Positions 38,660 through 49,100 of a DNA stretch of 64,000 nucleotides are shown here, piece after piece. The position numbers were made by a program, and so were the translations under genes. Source of the DNA: Ramazzottius varieornatus (lineage: Eukaryota > Animalia > Tardigrada); contig BDGG01000011.1 of NCBI GenBank assembly GCA_001949185.1, positions 517,552 to 581,551 on the forward strand, written 5' to 3'. The notes under the pieces were generated by a model, which ran no database searches, was not told where the DNA came from, and worked only from the letters and a program-made list of their open reading frames with translations. Each line of letters begins with the position of its first letter. Positions within the stretch are counted from its first letter, which is position 1.

Positions 38660-39344
38660 GATTTGTCGGATGCTTCCGTGAAGGACGGTTCAGTTGATGA
38701 TCCGGTGTAAGCTGGGTGGAAGGCTTACTACTGAAACAGGGAAAGTCGATTTGGCCTTTTGACTAACTAAAATCCCCAAGTGCAACCTCCACATATTAGC
38801 TCAAACTTGAGACGGCAAAGTAGCTCCCCTAGCTGGAAAACGGGATAAAAGGCGAGTGGTAAGCACGAATCTGCCTTGCTGTGACCAGCAGTACGTGCTT
38901 CACTTCACCCATGCCAGCACTTTTTCGCCGACTCTTTACTGGATGAGTTTCAAGTTTTGTTAACCGACGTACGCGGACCAAACCCTTTAAATCACGAAGA
39001 CAAATTTTACTGACGGGGCTGAATCGGCTCTGGGTGTTTGATAGAAGGATGTTTCTCGCGATTAGAAAATTAACAACAGAAGCAAATAGTTTATAGGCGA
39101 AAGATGTGAGAAGTGGATGGATAGGAAACAGGACAATTTTGAGATCTTGTTGACAGGACGTCATTCTTTCTCGTCGGGAGGACGGTGCCATGCAGAATTG
39201 CTGAGGGGAAACCAACCGGGAACACCGGGATAGGTGAACTTGCATAATATTATGCGTGTATGCAAAGCGTGAGGAACAAGTGTTTTAGTCAGCTTTGGGC
39301 AAAAGCAGTTTAAAAAAAACGAAGCGAACTTTCGGCCAGAACTA

Positions 39345-40208
39345 TTAGACGGCTTTGGGTCCATCCAGCTCCTTTTTCGACAGGACGAAACTGATGATGA
39401 ACAGTATACCGTTTATCAAGGCAATCACCTGAAAAGCAAAAACATCTTTATGATCAGAGTTTGCTCCCAGTTCGGATCAATTTGCAGGCAGGAATTATAC
39501 CCCGGCTGCGATGCGAACGCCGTATTCATTACTGGTCATCAGGTCGCGATTAGCGTCGTCTCGTTTGAAGTTTTCCGTTTGTACAATCTCGACAATGCCA
39601 GCGATCAGCAACAATATGGCCAAAACCTGCAACGACGTCACTTTATGGCGGCAAAGGCTGTGAGCATGAGATCAAGACAGCACGTATGCAAGGCAGAACA
39701 ATGAGGGCGTACGTACCATATTCATGATGTTTTCGACCTGGGTCCCTTTCGGCGTCAGCATGCTAGAGACGGTGTGAAAGGCATAGGCCATCAGGATGAC
39801 CAGCAACATGGCCAAGGCGATGGAATGGACACACAGGTAGTACACTTCGCCGCTCATGAACATTTCCCGTCGGTACGAGTAGTAGCTGCCTGCAGCTGGC
39901 GCCCCAGCTGGGCTAGTTACAACTTGCAACTGTCTTTCATCCCTGCAGCGAAAATGGGATGTACATTTCTTGGTGGGCAAAGAGTTTCCGTGAAGAAAGC
40001 TTTACAAGACCTCGATTTGCAGTTTGGCAAACAAACTCGACAAGATTGCTTTCTCAAGTGGCGCACGTTTCCACGGTAATCGGATGAAAGGCGCGCCACT
40101 TGGACAAAGGATCTCATGTGATTTGTTTACCAGGGTCTCAGATCAAACAAGGCTGCTAGTATCGTACCTCATGGATCCAACCAGGCCGATTCCTATCACC
40201 GTTAGAAT
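39345..40208 (-). CDS. MARVEL/Snakeskin-like 4-TM protein, 3' cassette C (4 exons)
   Basis: ILTVIGIGLVGSMR...GEVYYLC...ENIMNMVLAILLLIAGIVE...RIAAGVIALINGILFIISFVLSKKELDGPKAV*. Starts at a phase-0 acceptor, TTTTGCAG|ATT. Confidence 0.8.
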
Positions 40209-40838
40209 CTGCAAAAGCCCCACCATACACAAATATTCATAGTTATATATTGTAAGTGCCCTGAGCTTCTGGTGACCCAGTAAATTCAATGGGATAGCTA
40301 GCCTGCCGCTAGCTTTTCCGAGACCTTCCATATCAGATTCATGCAAAAATAGGAGACACAGCAGCGCGTCATGGACCGAATCTCTTGAGTTTTTCCTAGG
40401 GATATTGCCTTTTTCCTAGTTTTTCCTGTGGTTGTTCGCCAGTCATGTACCATGTTAATTTTCTTCTTTGTCTTGATTTTCTGTTCTTCTATAACGTTGT
40501 TACCCTGTATTGCTTTTGACTTCAATGTGTTATAGGCTAAACGGAAGTTCGGAAAAAAATATAATGCAAAGCTAAGTACACCTTTTCAGCACCGGAAGCA
40601 GCAGTTCCGTGACCGAAAATTTCACTATAGACATCGTAAATTAACTGCAGGAGCTGAAGATGTATATAGTTATACGGTTTAGCGTGGAATATAAAGCTTA
40701 AAATTGTATCAGGATATTGATCTAGCATTTGCTACAGAGCTGAAAAATTTATTCGGGTGAGCTGTCAAGCAGTCGAGTGATTCCAGTTGGTGTCTTTTTC
40801 GCCCATACGGCCGCGCGCTTCGAAGACAAACCGAGTAT

Positions 40839-41795
40839 CTAGCGTGCTTCATTGCGGGGTCCTTGGAATTCCTTGACGGCCAATGCGAAGCTGATCAAGT
40901 GGAAGATCGACAGGAAAAGAGCCAAAGACTACAACAATAAAACAGGAAATCAGCATTCTGACAGGGGGACAGGAGACACGAGGAACTTACCCCAGCAGCA
41001 ATGCGGCATCCCCAATCTTGGAAGAGCATGTCGGGTGATCGGTATACAGCGCGGGTCAGGCCAGCATCGTTGATGGCAATGCCTCCAGGTCCGATCAGTT
41101 GGCCGGCGGCGTTGGTCCGTACCTGGATCTGGTTACCATTAGCGTCCGTAACGATTCCGTTGACTGGCGCGCGGATTTCCCGTCCGTTCCAGGCTTCGCG
41201 GCAAGTCATGGCCAGCTGGACAATACCAGCTGTGGCCCATGCCAAGAACAGCAGGAAGTTGATGACAATTTCGAAATAACTGAAAAATACAGGGAAATAT
41301 TCAGAACACTGTTCACGAACACTGTTGCCGAATACTAGTGTTTCCAGAGTTTTCGAAGATTTTTCGAAAGACATCGGCAACAAGTTGAGCATAATTGTTT
41401 TTCAAAGTGACGCACCCTTTCGGTCAACAATGAAACCGCGCGCCGCTTGAGCTGACTTTTGCATGGTCGTTTCTGAAAGTGGCGCAAAATCTCGGTCAAG
41501 AACAACGGGAATGTGCGCCACTTGGAATAACGATCTCGTCCAAGTCATTTGCCGACGTCTCAATTTTTGATGAATTCAACAGGGTTACTCACGTGGTTTT
41601 TGGTATGAGGACCGACGAAACGACAGACCAAGCGAAGGTGGTCAGTTGGCCGAAAAGGTAGGTGAGGGCAGCAGCGCAGATGCACAGAAAGAAGACTTCA
41701 CCGGCCAGGAAGTACTCGACGGGCCATCCCACCACCGTTGTCGTACCTTCTCGTCGTCGGGAGGCAGCCAATCCAAGCGCTACCACCGTTACGAT
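40839..41795 (-). CDS. MARVEL/Snakeskin-like 4-TM protein, 3' cassette B (3 exons)
   Basis: IVTVVALGLAASRRR...GEVFFLC...EIVINFLLFLAWATAGIVQ...WGCRIAAGSLALFLSIFHLISFALAVKEFQGPRNEAR*. Phase-0 acceptor ATTAG|ATC; AATAAA (minus strand) at 40748-40753. Confidence 0.8.
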
Positions 41796-42237
41796 CTAAT
41801 ATTGATGCTCACAGTTACCACATGCCTGCACCAACTTTATAGTGTTGCATCTACCAAGTCCTTGCTACCGGTACCATTAAGGATTAGTCCCGGCTACCGT
41901 AGAACCAAGCGCTGCGAAACCATGGCCATCGCACTACAGAAGACTGAGCTTTGGGTTTTCGCGTTTTGGGGTATTTACGTTGGCATCTTAGTGAAGGAAA
42001 AAAATGTAAAGCTTTTGGAAACGCGAATTCGGAAGTGGAAAATACAACGTAGCTGCGTGTGTTAGGACATCACTATTGATATAATCCGCATACAGATAAG
42101 GCAAAACGAAGGACATGAAACTGTCATCTGAAGATTAGTTTGATCTAAAAGGTGTCTGGAGCATTGAACCTCATCATTCTCAAAGCTGTACAGTATAGCC
42201 AGCAGATACAAGCGTCGAAAAGACTGCCGCACTACGC

Positions 42238-42928
42238 TTAAGGCAATCTATGGGATTCAGTGTACTTTCGGGTTTCAATGACGTCCCGTTGGATACCGAC
42301 CGGGTGGTCGCGTGCGCTAATGGGGCTGGCACTGAGCGGCGCACTACGCTTGGGTCCTTGCAGTTCCTTGACGGCCAGGGCAAAGCTGATGAGGAAGAAG
42401 GTGCCGATGAACAGCGACAAAGCCTACAGACACGCCAGAGACTCATTAAGCGGCAAGCTCTTTTCTACCGAAGGCATGCTCAACCTACCCCAGCAGCCAC
42501 ACGGCATCCCCAGTCGCCCTGTTCCATCCCTGGACGACCATTGTAAGGGTAACTGTTGGGGACGGTCTGGGCCAGCTCGACGATACCGGCAGTCCAGAAC
42601 ATGAGCATGAAGAGAAAGTTGAAGACTACCTCGTGGATGGTCGTCTTCGGTGTGATAACTACAAGACAGGATTTCTATTGACTAAATTTCCCCGAAAAGC
42701 TACGAAGACCGAAGGAAATGGGACTAATATACCTGAAGACACGACATGCATCATGTAAGTCAGGAGGATGGCCACCAGCCACATCAGTCCGGCCGACATG
42801 ACGCACAGGAAAAAGACCTCGCCCGTCAGAAAGTATTCAATGCGCCATGAATCAGCCGCCGGCAGCTCGAGACCGGGAGCTTCTCGTCGACGTGAAGCGG
42901 CTAAACCCAAAGCCACCACGATGGTCAC
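42238..42928 (-). CDS. MARVEL/Snakeskin-like 4-TM protein, 3' cassette A (3 exons)
   Basis: VTIVVALGLAASRRR...GEVFFLC...EVVFNFLFMLMFWTAGIVE...WGCRVAAGALSLFIGTFFLISFALAVKELQGPKR. Phase-0 acceptor TTGTAG|GTG. Confidence 0.8.
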
Positions 42929-45900
42929 CTACAAGAACGATAGCCAGATGTCAACCTTTGGGCTTTTGCACTGACTGTCCCGATACCTCAACTACAGGGC
43001 GTGGCTTCGCTTTGTTCTCTTTTAATACAGAAGGCTGGTTCAACCCATGCAGAGGAAAACTCAAAAAGTACCACCGCTACCGCCACCATAAATGCACAAG
43101 GACTAAGCAGACACCAACACGCAACGGTAGAGGGCGCCACTGGGCATCACACGTTTGAAATTGAGCAAGCGGGTTAGTAGCCAGAAAGAAGTTAATGGTT
43201 GTGACTTTGAGGCCCAAGCAGCATGCGTGAAAATCTTTTACAGACGTAAAACAGACCATTAAAAGAAATGCCAAAGCTAGCCACGCCCTGTTTGTCTGTT
43301 TTGATTGCCGCCGTTTCATTGCTTTGAGTGCACGAGGGTATTACGCAAGAAGATCTCAACCTGCAATGTAAGCCTAAGTCAGCTTCTGAATCTCTGATGA
43401 TGATAATAGATGACGTTTTACGATGTGAAATGGGAGGTCTTCACAAAAAGAAATTGAGGCTAGTGTTTCACAGCTCGCTGCTGTAGCTGTAGCGCAAGAT
43501 GGATGAATTGGCCGAAGAGAAAAAGAGCTTGGTGTTATCTAGGTTTATCGTCTGTCAGTGGTGGATGGTAGAACGAGATGGACCTCTGGCGGCGATCTAG
43601 GTCTCGTCACGGTCAATGCCGCCCACCGCTACCGATATCTCTCTACCTTCAGCTGCAGATGAGATGGCCACGCAGCGACACTAAAAGCCTTCTTGACAAC
43701 TGCTCATTAATTTTTCACATCAAGGAAAAATGCTAGCTGCAATGTGGAGACGATGGCTTGAACTCAAAAAAAGAGCAGTGCGCGAGAAAGAATATGATCG
43801 AAGAGTGATAAGGTGAAATGTGCCTGCTGGGCTAGCGACCTATAATGAATGTGGAAGAGCCAGGTATCGATGTATAGGAAAGAAGAGCAAAAGGCCACCA
43901 TTACAGTATCACAAAATACCCTTCGTCTTCTACTGCCATCGACAATACGAAAGCTCAGCTAGAAAAGACGCGGCTAGGTCAGACCATCACCCCAAGCATC
44001 TACTACCACCACGATCAAAGCATATCTCAACAGTTAGATCTTGAGCTTGACATTCACCCACCAGAAAATTAGAGCGCACATAAACCATTAACAGGGAAAA
44101 AATCCGAATAAAACTAATTTAGAGTATTGCATGAAGTTTGTGTGCGGATTTACTCCATGGTTTGAAGCTTGGTGCTACCACTATTGCTTATGGCTAGTCA
44201 CGGATAAGGAAGCTCGTTGCTCTGTAAGTGTTCCATGGGCAAAGCTAAAGCGTACCGACGCCGCATGATTAACGCCATTTCACGATCGAACGTCCAAGTC
44301 AGACGTTCCAACAACTAGTGCCGCTTTGGCTTCCTTCCTCTTGCATTTGCATATGCAAGCACAGAGAGCATAGGTACGGGTACAGCGTGAGGCTTTTACA
44401 GGTCGAAAGATCCGGAGCTAGACTAGCTGCCTACCATTATCCTGATGACTTCCTGTTGTGTTACCTTTCAGCCTAGCTTACTGCACATCGATCGAAGGAA
44501 GGCGCTTCCCTACCTTTCCTCTTGTTGACAGCAAGATGAGAAACGAATGAAGCTAAATCCTCGCATTCCAGAGCGCTTAACCGACTGCGTAACCTCAACG
44601 AACATGAGGTTATGAAACGCACGTGAAAGAGATTGCCTGTAGGGTTCTTCAGGCATATACCCAGTCGTCGATGTCAGAGTGTGCTTTGTCAGCGTAACAA
44701 TTCGACCAAAAAGTCCAAACGCAAACAAACATTCGTGCATACACACACAAGCGCTTTTTCGGAAAAGTGTAATGGCTGTTTGCCGCTCTCTTTCCTCTAC
44801 CGCTCTGCCTGGCCTCTTTGTTGGTCAAAACTTGGGTAAACAACTTTGGAAGGTGAAGCAAGCTTTCGCCGGAACTTTTGTCGCCTCCATTGAGCGACAA
44901 TGGGACGGAATGAAAATCAAATATACGCCTTATGAAAACAGGAGGCAAGCTATACTTCCGCTATACTCCATCCGCACAGTCATCCTTTCCTGGAAAAATT
45001 GCCTTCGGTTGTCAACAGGTCGATATTTGGAACATTCCTTCCAATCGACCTCATGATGTAACCTCCGAATATCTTATGCAGGGTTATGCAACAAAAATCA
45101 GAAAAATTTTCTGGGTTTCAGCACAAAAAAATTGTTTGTCGCTCCAAGGAACAAAATTACAGATTTTGAGTCGTTGATATTTGGCACTGTTGAGAATAGC
45201 ATGGGTAGTATGTTTTCGGACAAAGCGATATTACACCAGATCGTCAAGTGGAAACAAGAGCTGAGTTTGTGCTTTTTTTTGTGAAAGTGTTCAAGTGCTT
45301 GTCATAGAGAATTCAATATATGGCTAGGTTAGCCCGCGCTTCCTGGCACAGCACAACGCGACACCGTGTTTGTGGTGCTAACACAAAAGAGGGGTGCTTG
45401 AATTGATTAATATGTGAACCAAGAAGCTCTGATTCACATTTAGAGTTTGCTGACGTATGCGGAACAGATCAGCGCTGAGTTTTATACTTCAAACCCAAGA
45501 CAAACAATCACTTAAAGTACCAGTGCGACGTCTCTTTTCTCTCTGATGGTGCGATGGCCAGTGACCTAGGCTACGCCAAGTGGCGGTTACACTCGGTTGC
45601 GTGTAGCTCCATCCTCTCCGTAATTAGTGCAAAGCGTAGCTGTAGCTCGAGTACACTCGGCCATTGTTGATGAGCCCAGCGCGCGCGTGTTAGTCAAGAG
45701 TAAACTGGGTGATGAGGGACTATACTATACATTGTACAATGACTGGCGAAGAACGATCTTGGTTAGTTAAGACCGTCACCGTTAGGTTAGTGCGTGGATA
45801 GGACTATGGTTAGTTAGAAGTCAGTCCAATCAAGAGTTCAAAGAGGAGAACAAGCTGGCCTGACGCCTGTGTAGTTGAGCTACCAGAGACTTCTCTGTTT

Positions 45901-45953
45901 TGTCAGTTAGGAGGGAAGTCTAAAGGTGTTGGTCAGTACGGGCAATGACTTAC

Positions 45954-46100
45954 CAGTTCGAGGACTTTGAGGATGCCGGGGATCTTGCCGAAATAGTTGA
46001 TGTTGAAGCCGGGCGTGGAGGTGATGGTGGCGTTGACCGAGTTGGTGTGGTTGCCGCGGATGATGCTGTAGTTCAGCGTTTTGGTCGTGGTAGTCACCAT
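45954..46100 (-). CDS. Shared first coding exon of the MARVEL-like gene (49 aa; below the ORF-track cutoff)
   Basis: MVTTTTKTLNYSIIRGNHTNSVNATITSTPGFNINYFGKIPGILKVLEL, then a perfect phase-0 donor |GTAAGT. NINYF..IPGILKVLEL matches the typical start of the MARVEL domain. Confidence 0.85.
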
Positions 46101-49100
46101 GATGATGGATCGGCTACAGGAATAGCACGGTAATCACTTGTGGAATCGAGGGGGAAATATCGTCGGGCAATATGGCGGAACGAGCCAGCGAGCGAGTGCG
46201 AGAAAAATATCCGTGAGAGAGTGATCGAGCTAGAGAGATTGTTATGGCTTTCGAGTGAGCCTAGATGTTGTGTCAAAGGCGCCAAGCTTTGTCGCTGAAA
46301 TGGAATGATGGAAATTACCAGCTATAAGCTGTAGCACAGGAATGTCGTCGAACGACTTTCTCAACCAGGTATATATGCTATAGTACGAGTTTTTCATTCG
46401 ACTTAAACAACCCCGACCGGTACTGTAGTACGCGGTCGACGGTACAGTCCAGTCGTGCTGACTTAGCAGATTACCATGTACCGCTGTGGCATTCAGGTGT
46501 ACAATAACAACGCCGTACAAATCGATGTTGCGATGCGCTGTACAGGTGGAATTGGATACGGGTTAGGTCAGACAGCGATGGCTCTAGATCTGTATCAAGA
46601 TCTCTTTGCCGTCCTAACTTCGTAGGCTGTTGGTTTGCACCCCCAAGCATACCATGAGAAACCGATGATTCCATTGAAAAGCAGCTTTCGGCACTTTTCC
46701 ACCCGTTCGAAGGGTACAACAACTTTCCTATAATGTTGCAGTATATGATCCACCAACAGGATCCTAATTCGAATTCCGAGCTGTGCGTTCTTTGTTGTTG
46801 CCGTACCGCAATAGGGTGTTTTCGCAGTGAATACTGCTGCAGCAGCACGAAACGTCTTTCTTATTCCGGGGTCATGTTCGTACGCGAAAAAGGCACGTAA
46901 ACAAGGATGAGGTCTCGCATATTAGCGTTAGGTTCGCGATGCCTCTTGCGTCGGAGATAACAGCTCCTCTCAGGCCGGTAGTTGCAAATTATGCTGCCCT
47001 ACCTGGAAACCCGGCACACGATCGATCGCCTTCCCCACGTATAAAATTGATCAAAGTATAACAGACCATATTTTGATGTCGAGTGAAAGCAGCTTACTGA
47101 AGGCAGATGATTGGTGGAGTTCCACACAAAGCTTGTTGTCTCTCAATCAAACGGCTCGATGCTCGTGGACCAAAAGATTTTTTTTATTAAAGTGTCGTGT
47201 GGGCGTTAACCGCACGAGAGCCTTCAAAAAGGACTCGATATTCGTTGTCGCTTGCGCATCATCGAACGGAATTGGAAGCAGGGACGAACAGAGGACCGAG
47301 CTCCCCGGAAAGACTTTGAAATTCAAGACGCAACTGTCACTTCCCTATTAAGTCAGACCCCGGTGAGGTGCCTAGTATATTTGCTGGCCACGGCACAAAA
47401 ATTCCAGAGAGTGTTACACCGTCCAGCTGCGTTCAATATTAAAATTTCAGTCTCTGGATGTTTGGCGAGTAACAGCACACTTGATAAAATCGTTTTCCCA
47501 AGTGGCGCACGGTTTAGGTACTAATGGCTGAAAGCATGCACCACTTAGTCAGAGCATGTTGGTGAGGTTTCCCAAGTGGCGCCCGTCTCCGGTGTTAATT
47601 GGTGGGGGCGTGCGCCACTTGCGAAACGATTTTGCTGAGCTAGCTTGACTCGGTCCCGGCTTGACCTCGGAAGTTTTACAGATTCCTAGAACTCAATCAG
47701 ATGACTTGAATGGTACTGATTGAAATGGACGTTTGTTGGTTGGAGCAGACGAACATGTAAATTTCCCGTGTTCGTGTCCCGACCATGACCATGTGTACAG
47801 CCCGACATTGTTCGAAGGCTGGATTCCCATACAGTGCCGAAAATTGATTTGACTTTGACATACCAAAGTTTAACAGACAATTAGATCACAAAAATTTCGC
47901 GCAATGCTCAGCGATCATCTAGTTAGCAACCCTTGTACACCGTATATATATCACTGGCTCACAACAATACCAAGAATAATTGAGCATGCCAAGATGACAG
48001 ACAAGTGCTGCAACGGCACGAAGAAGTTTGTGTGGCTTGGAAGGCCAACGCTAAGCTATTGCCGACACGACTGACTCAGCACTCGAGAATGTTTCTCTAT
48101 ACCTGAGGAAGCCTACCTGGTCACATTCCAGGCGCATTTTTTCTCCATCAGCTGCAAAACAAAACACACCGTGACGAACGCAAGTTGAGCGTCCTTCACC
48201 TTAGCGAATTTCATCAAGCCTCAGTCAGGCTGCACTGATACACGAAACCACAACTTCTTTACCACCTGCAAGCTGGCCTGTAGACAGACCCACCGAACAA
48301 TACACCGGCTCTGAGACGGTAATCGGGCCTTCTTTTGCCTCAAATCGAAACTCGGATTTTGGGAGACCCACATGTCAATACTTGTCAGGTGACATAACAG
48401 CCTTGAAATAGTTTCTTCAGCCGCGACCACATTCCTCATGACAATGTTGTCGGTGCTCCTATTTCCATATTAATCACATAGTCAGTGGGCTCCTTTCGGG
48501 TCATAAGCCTAATCACATGTCCTCAATTAGAAGATGGCAGACTTGCTGGTGCCAGTTCTAATTCGTGTACATGCTTCTTCGAGAATATTCTCTGTTTTAT
48601 TACGAGCCTATACGAGCGCGTGTACATGACTACTGGTTGCTGTGAAAGCGCGGCGGTTTCATTCTTCGTTACCGGTAATAAACAATGCGCCACGGAATTA
48701 GTTTGCAACCAGTTTTTCCGCATTTTTCTCTCAGAATATAATCTTCTTGTTTACGCAACAGACAGAAGATCACAATGTGCCATTGCGTCACCTGCTGTCA
48801 TCAACAACCCTGGCATGCTAAGAGAATAAATGCGAAATTGGATTCATCGATCAACTTCAGCACAAGAAGAAACACTGTGCATTATTCTGGATCGCGACGA
48901 TCGAGGTCTGCATAGATGCTAGTGCTTCTGCATTCCGCAATGTGGAGCCAGGCAAACAAACCCGACAAGACTGTTTTCCCAGATGGCGCACATCTAGATC
49001 TTCAGTGTTATGGGCTAAAGGCTCCAGTAAAAACCCATCTTGCCGTGTTTTCCCAAGTGGCGCACGTTTCCAGTGTCATCTGCGTAAAACGTGCGCGCCC

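What the first reader, a model, noticed from the sequence alone, without database searches (positions are those of the whole stretch)
39345..46100. One MARVEL first exon appears to serve three tandem, whole-protein 3' cassettes
Seen: three paralogous multi-exon modules (42928-42238, 41795-40839, 40208-39345) each begin mid-TM1 at a phase-0 AG (VTIVVALG / IVTVVALG / ILTVIGIG) and end in their own stop. None has a convincing start exon of its own. The only MARVEL N-terminus I find (..NINYFGKIPGILKVLEL|GTAAGT, phase 0) lies 3-6 kb upstream at 46100-45954 and completes TM1 for all three. Known: MARVEL and Snakeskin-type 4-TM proteins act in junctions and membrane apposition. Inference: a single gene makes three diverged junction proteins with different extracellular loops by mutually exclusive terminal-cassette choice, the reverse of the clustered protocadherin layout. 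Annotators would probably call three truncated genes.
Basis: partly seen in the sequence, partly recalled or inferred. Interest (0 to 1): 0.85.

Follow-up and report, generated by a model that had tools for sequence, protein, structure and literature searches.

The report
One start exon, three MARVEL bodies
A tardigrade gene joins one shared first coding exon to any of three tandem exon sets, making three different four-helix MARVEL membrane proteins; RNA data confirm this, but public annotation already lists at least two of the three as isoforms and the layout has a known precedent in worm unc-60.

Summary
The observation and the core interpretation both hold. The window comes from Ramazzottius varieornatus. 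On the minus strand, one start exon (46100-45954, 49 aa) is followed by three paralogous cassettes: A (42928-42238), B (41795-40839) and C (40208-39345). All introns are GT-AG, and each exon 1 + cassette combination is an open frame (232, 242 and 207 aa).

RNA-like contigs from three independent studies carry all three predicted joints: 45954>42928, 45954>41795 and 45954>40208. They also carry every internal joint. No coverage sits upstream of B1 or C1 where separate start exons would lie.

The exon is unique in the genome apart from an intronless paralogue, which differs at 6 of the last 30 bases.

Public annotation already models one gene, RvY_14932. Isoform -1 equals exon 1 + B and isoform -3 equals exon 1 + C.

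The three cassettes are one-to-one orthologous in Hypsibius and Paramacrobiotus, so the layout predates the split of the two Parachela superfamilies. Related insect genes (Hermetia, Culex) show the same isoform pattern.

The fold and Pfam match are MARVEL. A link to Snakeskin or cell junctions is unsupported.

A rare cluster of CTAAC words lies just after the shared donor. It recalls the unc-60 splicing switch.

Verdict: real, conserved, undescribed in papers, but a new member of a known kind.

The parts
45954..46100 (-). Shared first coding exon (E1). It encodes 49 aa: the N-terminal tail plus the first 10 residues of membrane helix 1. Its donor is GTAAGT.
   Evidence: in-frame TGA at 46136 with no ATG in between; contig depth is highest here and the contigs end at the donor, which is the branch point; unique in the genome; the MARVEL match starts at residue 39 and modelled helix 1 spans residues 40-60.
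46101..46139 (-). 5' UTR. It continues upstream of the stretch that was laid.
   Evidence: record 9 of run X13: a 418-letter contig ends at the E1 donor and has 232 letters beyond 46139.
45689..45914 (-). Cluster of seven CTAAC words (four as ACTAAC) within the first 265 nt of intron 1. It is a candidate binding site for a STAR-family splicing regulator.
   Evidence: 7 in 300 nt against 0.84 expected, and none of 2000 shuffles reached 7. It is the densest such stretch on either strand of the window; only 81 triple-CTAAC sites in the 55.8-Mb genome; a STAR_dimer gene is present in the genome. The function is inferred by analogy with unc-60.
42929..45953 (-). Intron 1 for isoform A (3025 nt). 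It is also the first part of the longer introns of isoforms B (4158 nt) and C (5745 nt).
   Evidence: the joint skips 3025 bases with GT..AG ends. An unspliced contig, 42900-45981, is present at low depth; no Rfam match and no repeat elsewhere in the genome.
42733..42928 (-). Cassette A, exon 1 (rest of helix 1, loop 1, helix 2).
   Evidence: joints 45954>42928 and 42733>42658; 82% identical to Hypsibius BV898_03472.
42489..42658 (-). Cassette A, exon 2 (helix 3 and loop 3).
   Evidence: 93% identical to BV898_03472.
42238..42423 (-). Cassette A, exon 3 (helix 4, C-terminal tail and stop).
41956..42237 (-). 3' UTR of isoform A.
   Evidence: the A contigs of three runs stop at 41956-41961, and depth is zero from there to 41796.
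41593..41795 (-). Cassette B, exon 1.
   Evidence: joint 45954>41795; found exactly in RvY_14932-1.
40991..41279 (-). Cassette B, exon 2 (helix 3 and a loop 3 that is about 45-70 residues longer than in cassettes A and C and in other species' B-type proteins).
40839..40928 (-). Cassette B, exon 3 (helix 4 and stop).
40459..40838 (-). 3' UTR of isoform B, with a poly(A) tail after 40459 in one run. Contigs reach 40352 in another run.
   Evidence: loose ends: a T-run before 40459 in X13, with no A-run in the genome at that place.
40168..40208 (-). Cassette C, exon 1 (41 nt, rest of helix 1).
   Evidence: joint 45954>40208; the loose end at 40167 reads into the start of the next exon at 39942; found exactly in RvY_14932-3.
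39717..39942 (-). Cassette C, exon 2.
   Evidence: the loose-end letters match its first 30 bases.
39501..39626 (-). Cassette C, exon 3.
   Evidence: not covered by the stretch that was laid.
39345..39428 (-). Cassette C, exon 4 and stop.
   Evidence: not covered by the stretch that was laid.

Best explanation
This is one gene of the tardigrade Ramazzottius varieornatus, publicly annotated as RvY_14932. Transcription starts upstream of a single first coding exon. That exon encodes a very conserved 49-residue N-terminus and the first half of membrane helix 1. Its strong donor is then spliced to one of three acceptors that lie 3.0, 4.2 and 5.7 kb downstream. Each acceptor opens a tandemly duplicated set of 3-4 exons that encodes the rest of a four-helix MARVEL domain, with its own stop codon; A and B are shown to have their own 3' ends. 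The products are three paralogous membrane proteins. They share the N-terminus and differ over the whole membrane body, most strongly in loops 1 and 3. That much is shown by the data. What follows is inferred. Isoform choice is a race between splicing to the nearest acceptor followed by cleavage at the A poly(A) site, and delayed excision of intron 1 with read-through to B or C. The dense CTAAC cluster just after the shared donor is a candidate site for a STAR-family protein that holds back the exon 1-A splice, as ASD-2 does in C. elegans unc-60. The likely purpose is cell-type-specific choice of MARVEL body under one promoter. The biochemical role of the proteins is unknown.
For: Sequence: all exons, phases and GT-AG sites fit, and there are three open frames. 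RNA: contigs from three studies carry 45954>42928, 45954>41795 and 45954>40208 with GT..AG ends, at word depths of 369/744/364, 256/766/284 and 125/146/54, plus every internal joint. In all three runs the depth of bin 41740-41939 equals exactly the 56 nt of exon B1, so nothing is transcribed stably between the end of A and B1. The same holds upstream of C1 in two of the three runs. A poly(A) tail is seen after 40459 for B, and the A contigs end at 41956-41961. Exon 1 is unique in the genome. The only relative differs at 6 of the last 30 bases, so the 27-30-letter sides of the joints can only be this exon. Public proteins RvY_14932-1 and -3 contain exon 1 followed exactly by the B or C exons. 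Paramacrobiotus LOC129584853 isoforms X1, X3 and X2 are A-, B- and C-type with one identical N-terminus. Hypsibius has exon 1 + A, and next to it a misjoined B + C model. In the tree, the A clade has 94 support, B has 100, A+B has 100 and C has 91. MARVEL: isoform C scores 41.2 bits against the 32.8 cut-off, with the match starting at residue 39 inside exon 1. The AlphaFold model has pLDDT 82 and four long helices, with helix 1 spanning the exon junction. Its best fold match is synaptophysin. CTAAC cluster. STAR gene present. unc-60 mechanism: PMC3469465.
Against: The exon 1 side of each joint is only 27-30 letters, just under the tool's own 31-letter rule for a bridging record. This is what contigs built from 31-letter words do at a three-way branch, but no single long molecule was seen. 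The runs are only guessed to be RNA; splicing and a poly(A) tail say they are. Contig depth cannot rank the isoforms. The exon 1 + A protein was not found in the protein database. The 3' end of C lay outside the 6-kb stretch. The regulatory role of the CTAAC cluster rests on analogy only. Intron retention is not specific to intron 1, because a small B intron is retained at a similar share.
Confidence: 0.9

Rival explanations
1. There are three separate tandem genes. B and C have their own promoters and small start exons that were overlooked, and the exon 1 joints are rare read-through products.
For: Tandem duplicates usually carry their own starts. In the fly Bradysia, two adjacent genes of the related family do have separate N-terminal exons. 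Open frames exist upstream of C1 and B1.
Against: Contig depth is zero in 41796-41955 in all three RNA-like runs. It is zero in 40209-40351 in two runs, with only a trace in the third. The only sequence joined to the 5' side of B1 and C1 is exon 1, at depths comparable to the cassettes themselves. Public models and orthologous isoforms carry the shared N-terminus. Without exon 1 each cassette lacks a start codon and the first half of helix 1.
Confidence: 0.03
2. Only exon 1 + A is the working gene. B and C are decaying duplicates that are spliced in by accident when the A poly(A) site is missed.
For: A is nearest and has the highest contig depth in all three runs. B falls below the Pfam cut-off at 18 bits.
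Against: B and C frames are intact, and each has orthologues in Hypsibius and Paramacrobiotus. B also has orthologues in many environmental tardigrade transcripts at 60-94% identity, which means long purifying selection. Their joints have depths 0.15-1.0 times that of A. B's low Pfam score comes from a loop insertion that other B-type proteins lack.
Confidence: 0.04
3. Exon 1 is joined to the cassettes in trans, from separate primary transcripts, as in Drosophila mod(mdg4).
For: Contigs cannot tell cis from trans joining.
Against: All parts lie in one orientation and in the same order in three genera. An unspliced contig runs continuously from exon 1 through the intron into A1. No transcript starts are seen at B or C. 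Cis splicing explains everything.
Confidence: 0.02

Closest known systems
C. elegans unc-60 (UNC-60A / UNC-60B ADF/cofilin), PMC3469465
   Same: It has a common first exon and separate tandem series of downstream exons. Each series encodes a complete paralogous protein with its own 3' end. The choice is mutually exclusive. CUAAC repeats in the intron after exon 1 drive the switch there, and a CTAAC cluster lies in the same place here.
   Different: There are three cassettes here, not two. The shared exon here encodes 49 conserved residues and half a membrane helix rather than little more than the start codon (the latter from my own knowledge). The proteins are MARVEL membrane proteins, not actin regulators. 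No (TG)n stretch lies next to the CTAAC cluster, and the only one is 1.2 kb away. Regulation here is untested.
MARVEL domain family (Pfam PF01284: synaptophysin, synaptogyrin, MAL, CMTM, occludin)
   Same: Four membrane helices. The Pfam match is above the cut-off for isoform C and for A-type orthologues. The best fold matches are synaptophysin and synaptogyrin.
   Different: No sequence match to any solved structure. There is a long, very conserved Thr/Asn-rich N-terminal tail. Isoform B is below the Pfam cut-off.
Arthropod CG1572-like MARVEL proteins (about 160-166 aa; automatic names include 'CKLF-like MARVEL transmembrane domain-containing protein 8', 'plasmolipin' and 'singles bar')
   Same: They are the nearest relatives outside tardigrades by profile search (E 1e-15 to 1e-4). 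They share the N..GYLKT.PG.LK motif at the start of helix 1. In Hermetia illucens (three isoforms) and Culex pipiens pallens (two isoforms), isoforms of one gene share the N-terminus and differ over the whole rest. Fused gene models place the cassette start at the same residue as here.
   Different: They are shorter, with short loops and only 20-29% identity. The insect cassettes are 69-79% identical to each other, so they are younger and duplicated independently. The genomic layout in insects could not be read here. The family has no known function.
Clustered protocadherins / UGT1A
   Same: One locus makes many related proteins by joining a variable unit to a constant unit.
   Different: It is the mirror image. 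There the variable first exons each have their own promoter and the 3' exons are shared. Here the start is shared and the ends vary, so choice is made by splicing and polyadenylation rather than by promoter choice (from my own knowledge).
Drosophila Snakeskin (smooth septate junction protein)
   Same: A small protein with four membrane helices (from my own knowledge).
   Different: No relative found here is named snakeskin. No direct comparison was possible because no Snakeskin sequence was on hand by reference.

Membership tests
MARVEL domain (Pfam PF01284) | Whole-protein score above the curated cut-off (32.8 bits) | tested here: met
   Isoform C (P0041) scores 41.2 bits, the intronless paralogue 38.7 and the Hypsibius A-type 34.9. 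Isoform B (P0073) scores only 18.0, and single exons at most 13.6. So the feature is met for C and for the A type, and not by B on its own.
MARVEL domain (Pfam PF01284) | Four membrane-spanning helices in an up-down bundle | tested here: met
   The AlphaFold2 model of isoform C has mean pLDDT 81.9, with helices at 40-60, 93-118, 131-157 and 170-202. Best PDB fold matches are synaptophysin (TM 0.59, E 4e-4) and synaptogyrin (TM 0.61 by target).
MARVEL domain (Pfam PF01284) | N- and C-termini in the cytoplasm | not testable with these tools
   No topology predictor or experiment was available. The conserved NxS/T triplets in the N-terminal tail are worth checking.
unc-60-type gene layout | A single first coding exon shared by all products | tested here: met
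   One copy in the locus and in the genome. It is present in both public isoforms.
unc-60-type gene layout | Two or more tandem series of downstream exons, each encoding a complete paralogous protein body with its own stop | tested here: met
   Three series.
unc-60-type gene layout | mRNAs join exon 1 to the first exon of each series and never mix series | tested here: met
   All three joints are seen in three studies. No joint between cassettes was listed.
unc-60-type gene layout | Separate 3' ends for each series | tested here: inconclusive
   The A contigs end at 41956-41961. B has a poly(A) tail after 40459. The 3' end of C lay outside the 6-kb stretch.
unc-60-type gene layout | Tissue-specific choice driven by RNA-binding proteins on the intron after exon 1 | not testable with these tools
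   Only a candidate element (CTAAC cluster) and a candidate factor gene (STAR_dimer) were found.
Snakeskin | Sequence relatedness to Drosophila Ssk | tested here: inconclusive
   No relative that carries a source's name in four look-ups (about 130 names in all) is called snakeskin. There was no direct alignment because no Ssk sequence was available by reference.
Panarthropod CG1572-like MARVEL group | Significant profile match and a shared motif at the start of helix 1 | tested here: met
   A profile of 26 tardigrade proteins hits collembolan, spider, crustacean, tick and insect MARVEL proteins at E 8e-15 to 1e-3. The alignment shows N33, Y36, P41, G42, L44 and K45 invariant or nearly so.

The most novel reading that the evidence does not exclude
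The split between a constant N-terminal exon and an exchangeable MARVEL body, at an intron in the middle of helix 1, may be an ancestral design of a panarthropod MARVEL family (the Drosophila CG1572 group). On this reading the design has been re-expanded independently: three old cassettes in tardigrades, three in Hermetia and two in Culex. Cassette choice would be switched by a STAR-family protein acting on a CUAAC cluster behind the shared donor, the same logic as nematode unc-60. That would make it a recurrent way to give different cell types different membrane-organising proteins from one promoter.
Probability: 0.3. Interest if true: 0.6.

Novelty: new member of a known kind. Interest (0 to 1): 0.42.

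Why it matters
It is a clean, RNA-supported case of three near-complete proteins made from one promoter by choice of terminal exon set. It has been conserved since before the two superfamilies of parachelan tardigrades split, and it is apparently mirrored in flies and mosquitoes. It offers a second, independent system beside unc-60 for studying how a donor site is kept waiting for a distant acceptor, and it comes with a concrete candidate element. It also marks a recurring annotation error: fused or wrong-frame models in Hypsibius, Hermetia and Culex. Finally, it points to an uncharacterised panarthropod MARVEL family whose extremely conserved N-terminus suggests a shared binding partner. It is not a new principle, and at least two of this gene's three isoforms are already in public annotation.

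Tried and rejected
Exon-by-exon Pfam search gave only a sub-threshold MARVEL hint (E 0.07 for A2), because single exons are too short.

Instead I used exon references, the natural intronless paralogue (L004:3824-4447:-) and public proteins that equal the B and C models.

A sequence search against solved structures found nothing. An Rfam scan of 39000-46600 found nothing. Intron 1 has no other copy in the genome. No fourth cassette or remnant exists in the window.

As a result, the genomic layout in Paramacrobiotus, Hypsibius, Hermetia and Culex was inferred from protein isoforms and fused models only, and I could not check whether orthologues of the intronless paralogue also lack introns.

The exon 1 + A protein (possibly RvY_14932-2) did not appear in either homologue search and could not be looked up.

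Reading intron-1 retention as a specific sign of regulation was rejected, because a small B intron is retained at a similar share. (TG)n as a SUP-12-like partner site was rejected, because the only stretch lies 1.2 kb from the CTAAC cluster.

Full report
**What is there**

- A start exon runs from the ATG at 46100 to 45954 and ends GAACTG|gtaagt in phase 0. An in-frame TGA lies at 46136 with no ATG in between.
- Three exon sets follow:
  - A: 42928-42733, 42658-42489, 42423-42238.
  - B: 41795-41593, 41279-40991, 40928-40839.
  - C: 40208-40168, 39942-39717, 39626-39501, 39428-39345.
- Every intron is GT-AG, and each set begins at a phase-0 acceptor and ends in its own stop.
- Joined to the start exon they give 232, 242 and 207 codons with one terminal stop each. 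This joining was done only inside a local script, to count frame and stops.
Searches used single exons by reference, a natural intronless paralogue, or public proteins.
- The sets are clearly paralogous. A1 vs B1 gives E=1e-15, and C2 vs A1 gives E=8e-10. Identity is about 52-64% between A and B exons and about 33-52% between C and either. DNA repeats between A and B are 75% identical.
- There is no fourth set or remnant in the window.

**Where it comes from**

The genome has 55.8 Mb in 200 contigs. Database names identify it as the tardigrade Ramazzottius varieornatus.

**RNA evidence**

This is 6000 letters, so C exons 2-4 could not be included. It used four runs from four different sources.

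- Three runs (X1, X5, X13, from three studies) behave as RNA: they are spliced, and one carries a poly(A) tail. X15 behaves as low-depth unspliced DNA.
- All three RNA-like runs carry the three predicted joints with GT..AG ends:

| Joint | Word depth X1 / X5 / X13 |
|---|---|
| 45954>42928 (A) | 369 / 744 / 364 |
| 45954>41795 (B) | 256 / 766 / 284 |
| 45954>40208 (C) | 125 / 146 / 54 |

- They also carry every internal joint of A and B.
- A loose end at 40167 has letters that are the start of C exon 2.
- The exon 1 side of each joint is only 27-30 letters, just below the tool's 31-letter rule for a bridging record. That is what contigs built from 31-letter words must do at a three-way branch. 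The letters are exact.
- The only other exon-1-like sequence in the genome differs at 6 of the last 30 bases. The sides therefore belong to this exon.
In bin 41740-41939 the depth in each run equals exactly 56/200 of the B1 contig depth (71.5, 214.5, 79.4). In bin 41940-42139 it equals exactly the A 3' UTR contig from 41956-41961 onward.
- So nothing is stably transcribed in 41796-41955.
- Likewise 40209-40351 is empty in X1 and X13, with only a trace in X5.
- B ends with a poly(A) tail after 40459 in X13, and the genome has no A-run there.
- Contig depth cannot rank isoforms. I say only that all three are present in all three studies.

**Independent support from annotation and other species**

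- A search with the intronless paralogue returned RvY_14932-3 (207 aa) and RvY_14932-1 (242 aa).
- Exon peptides occur in them exactly and in order: exon 1 + C1-C4, and exon 1 + B1-B3. The public annotation therefore already treats this as one gene with isoforms.
- An exon 1 + A protein was not among the hits, and I could not check whether it is isoform -2.
- In Paramacrobiotus metropolitanus (Macrobiotoidea), LOC129584853 isoforms X1, X3 and X2 are A-, B- and C-type, with one identical 49-residue N-terminus.
- In Hypsibius exemplaris, BV898_03472 is exon 1 + A.
- The neighbouring model BV898_03473 starts in the wrong frame of B1, continues through B2-B3 and runs straight into a C-type body.
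- Many roughly 1-kb transcript contigs of other tardigrades encode the same N-terminus (94-98% identical) fused to A- or B-type bodies.
- A tree of the parts after exon 1 gives:

| Clade | Support |
|---|---|
| A | 94 |
| B | 100 |
| A + B | 100 |
| C (all three genera) | 91 |
| C + the single-gene type | 100 |

- This was a quick search with SH-aLRT support. Rows shorter than 180 aa, and ten rows without the cutting motif, were left out. The A cassette of this genome was placed by exon-wise BLAST only.
- The three cassettes are thus older than the split of Hypsibioidea and Macrobiotoidea.

**The intronless paralogue**

- G000:C3:558823-559446 (RvY_06625, 208 aa) is one uninterrupted frame.
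- Its first 147 bases are 84% identical to exon 1. The rest is about 65-70% identical at DNA level to the C exons, and the whole protein is 56% identical to isoform C.
- It runs straight across all four intron positions of the exon 1 + C mRNA, and in the tree its clade sits next to the C clade, inside the same 100-support group.
- This fits an old retrocopy of an exon 1 + C mRNA. I rate that about 0.6. The alternative is intron loss.
- Either way it shows that the exon 1 peptide and a cassette together make one complete protein.

**What the proteins are**

- Pfam MARVEL scores are 41.2 bits for isoform C, 38.7 for the paralogue and 34.9 for the Hypsibius A-type, against a cut-off of 32.8. Isoform B scores 18.0, because of a loop-3 insertion that B-type proteins of other species lack.
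- The match starts at residue 39, inside exon 1.
- An AlphaFold2 model of isoform C (pLDDT 81.9) has four long helices at 40-60, 93-118, 131-157 and 170-202. Helix 1 spans the exon junction at 49|50.
- The best fold matches are the MARVEL proteins synaptophysin and synaptogyrin, followed by claudin/TARP-type four-helix proteins.
- The cassettes differ most in loops 1 and 3. Under the usual MARVEL topology these face outward. Topology was not tested.

**Relatives outside tardigrades**

- A profile of 26 tardigrade proteins finds arthropod MARVEL proteins of 160-190 aa: collembolan, spider, crustaceans, tick and insects.
- The insect group includes Drosophila CG1572. It appears in papers only in gene lists.
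- None of the named relatives is called snakeskin.
- Hermetia illucens LOC119656890 isoforms X2, X3 and X4 share the first 43-50 residues and then differ to the last residues.
- Culex pipiens pallens LOC120412825 isoforms X1 and X2 do the same.
- Fused models in Hermetia (277 aa) and Culex quinquefasciatus (333 aa) place the start of the second body directly after the ..LK..QL residues. That is the position of the tardigrade intron.
- This points to the same layout in flies.

**How the choice may be made (inference)**

[quoted passage not shown] There, STAR protein ASD-2 and SUP-12 bind CUAAC repeats and a UGUGUG stretch in intron 1A. This holds back its excision until the distal series is transcribed (PMC3469465).
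- Here the first 300 nt of intron 1 hold seven CTAAC words. Shuffles give 0.84 on average, at most 5 in any one, and none of 2000 reached 7. It is the densest such stretch on either strand of the window.
- Three such words within 25-nt gaps occur only 81 times in the whole genome, and many of those lie in dispersed repeats.
- The genome encodes a STAR_dimer protein (39.1 bits against a 26.3 cut-off).
- There is no adjacent (TG)n.
- An unspliced exon 1-intron-A1 contig exists at 2-9% of A depth. A small B intron is retained at a similar share, so I draw nothing from it.

**Verdict**

The junction/Snakeskin function is unsupported. The prediction about annotators is wrong for this genome. The kind of layout is known (unc-60), and at least two of this gene's isoforms are already in public annotation. 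What is new is the three-cassette MARVEL case, its age, its apparent recurrence in insects, and a testable regulatory element.

Noticed in passing
G000:C3:558823-559446 (L004:3824-4447, minus strand): Intronless paralogue RvY_06625 (208 aa, MARVEL 38.7 bits). Its first 147 bases are 84% identical to the shared exon. The rest is nearest to cassette C, and it runs straight across all four intron positions. It is probably an old retrocopy of the exon 1 + C mRNA. It is conserved in Hypsibius (83%) and Paramacrobiotus (68%).
   Followed up: partly
window 45689-45914 (minus strand): Seven CTAAC words sit within the first 265 nt of intron 1. This is the densest such stretch in the window and rare in the genome. 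It resembles the STAR-protein site of unc-60 intron 1A.
   Followed up: partly
Hypsibius exemplaris BV898_03473 (P0077); Hermetia illucens CAD7089939 (P0130); Culex quinquefasciatus KAL9700774 (P0282): These public gene models fuse two cassettes head to tail. The Hypsibius model also starts in the wrong frame of B1. They are mis-annotations caused by the shared-exon layout.
   Followed up: partly
Hermetia illucens LOC119656890 (P0178, P0199, P0190); Culex pipiens pallens LOC120412825 (P0293, P0137): These insect relatives (the Drosophila CG1572 family) have isoforms with one shared N-terminus and bodies that differ to the last residues. This suggests the same alternative-cassette layout arose, or persisted, in Diptera.
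   Followed up: partly
window 40056-40101 and 41513-41523, and 16 other sites between 22618 and 60824: The dispersed palindromic word AAGTGGCGC[AG]C occurs 19 times in the window against 0.07 expected. Copies lie in the first introns of cassettes B and C. In the DNA-like run X15, one contig matches only short stretches (41394-41426 and 41507-41527) next to the 41513 copy and then runs on into unrelated sequence.
   Followed up: partly
residues 1-38 of the shared exon (window 45987-46100): The N-terminal tail is 94-98% identical across tardigrade genera, far more than the membrane bodies. It holds three conserved NxS/T triplets and is modelled, at low confidence, as a beta-hairpin. That is odd for a tail expected to be cytoplasmic.
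   Followed up: no
window 42900-45981: An unspliced contig covers the whole 3-kb intron 1 in all three RNA-like runs, at about 2-9% of isoform A depth. The spacers between cassettes have none.
   Followed up: no
window 40991-41279 (cassette B exon 2): Loop 3 of isoform B is about 45-70 residues longer than in cassettes A and C and in most B-type proteins of other tardigrades. The nearest in length, Hypsibius and one environmental transcript, are only about 5-20 residues shorter. The extra length pushes isoform B below the Pfam cut-off.
   Followed up: no
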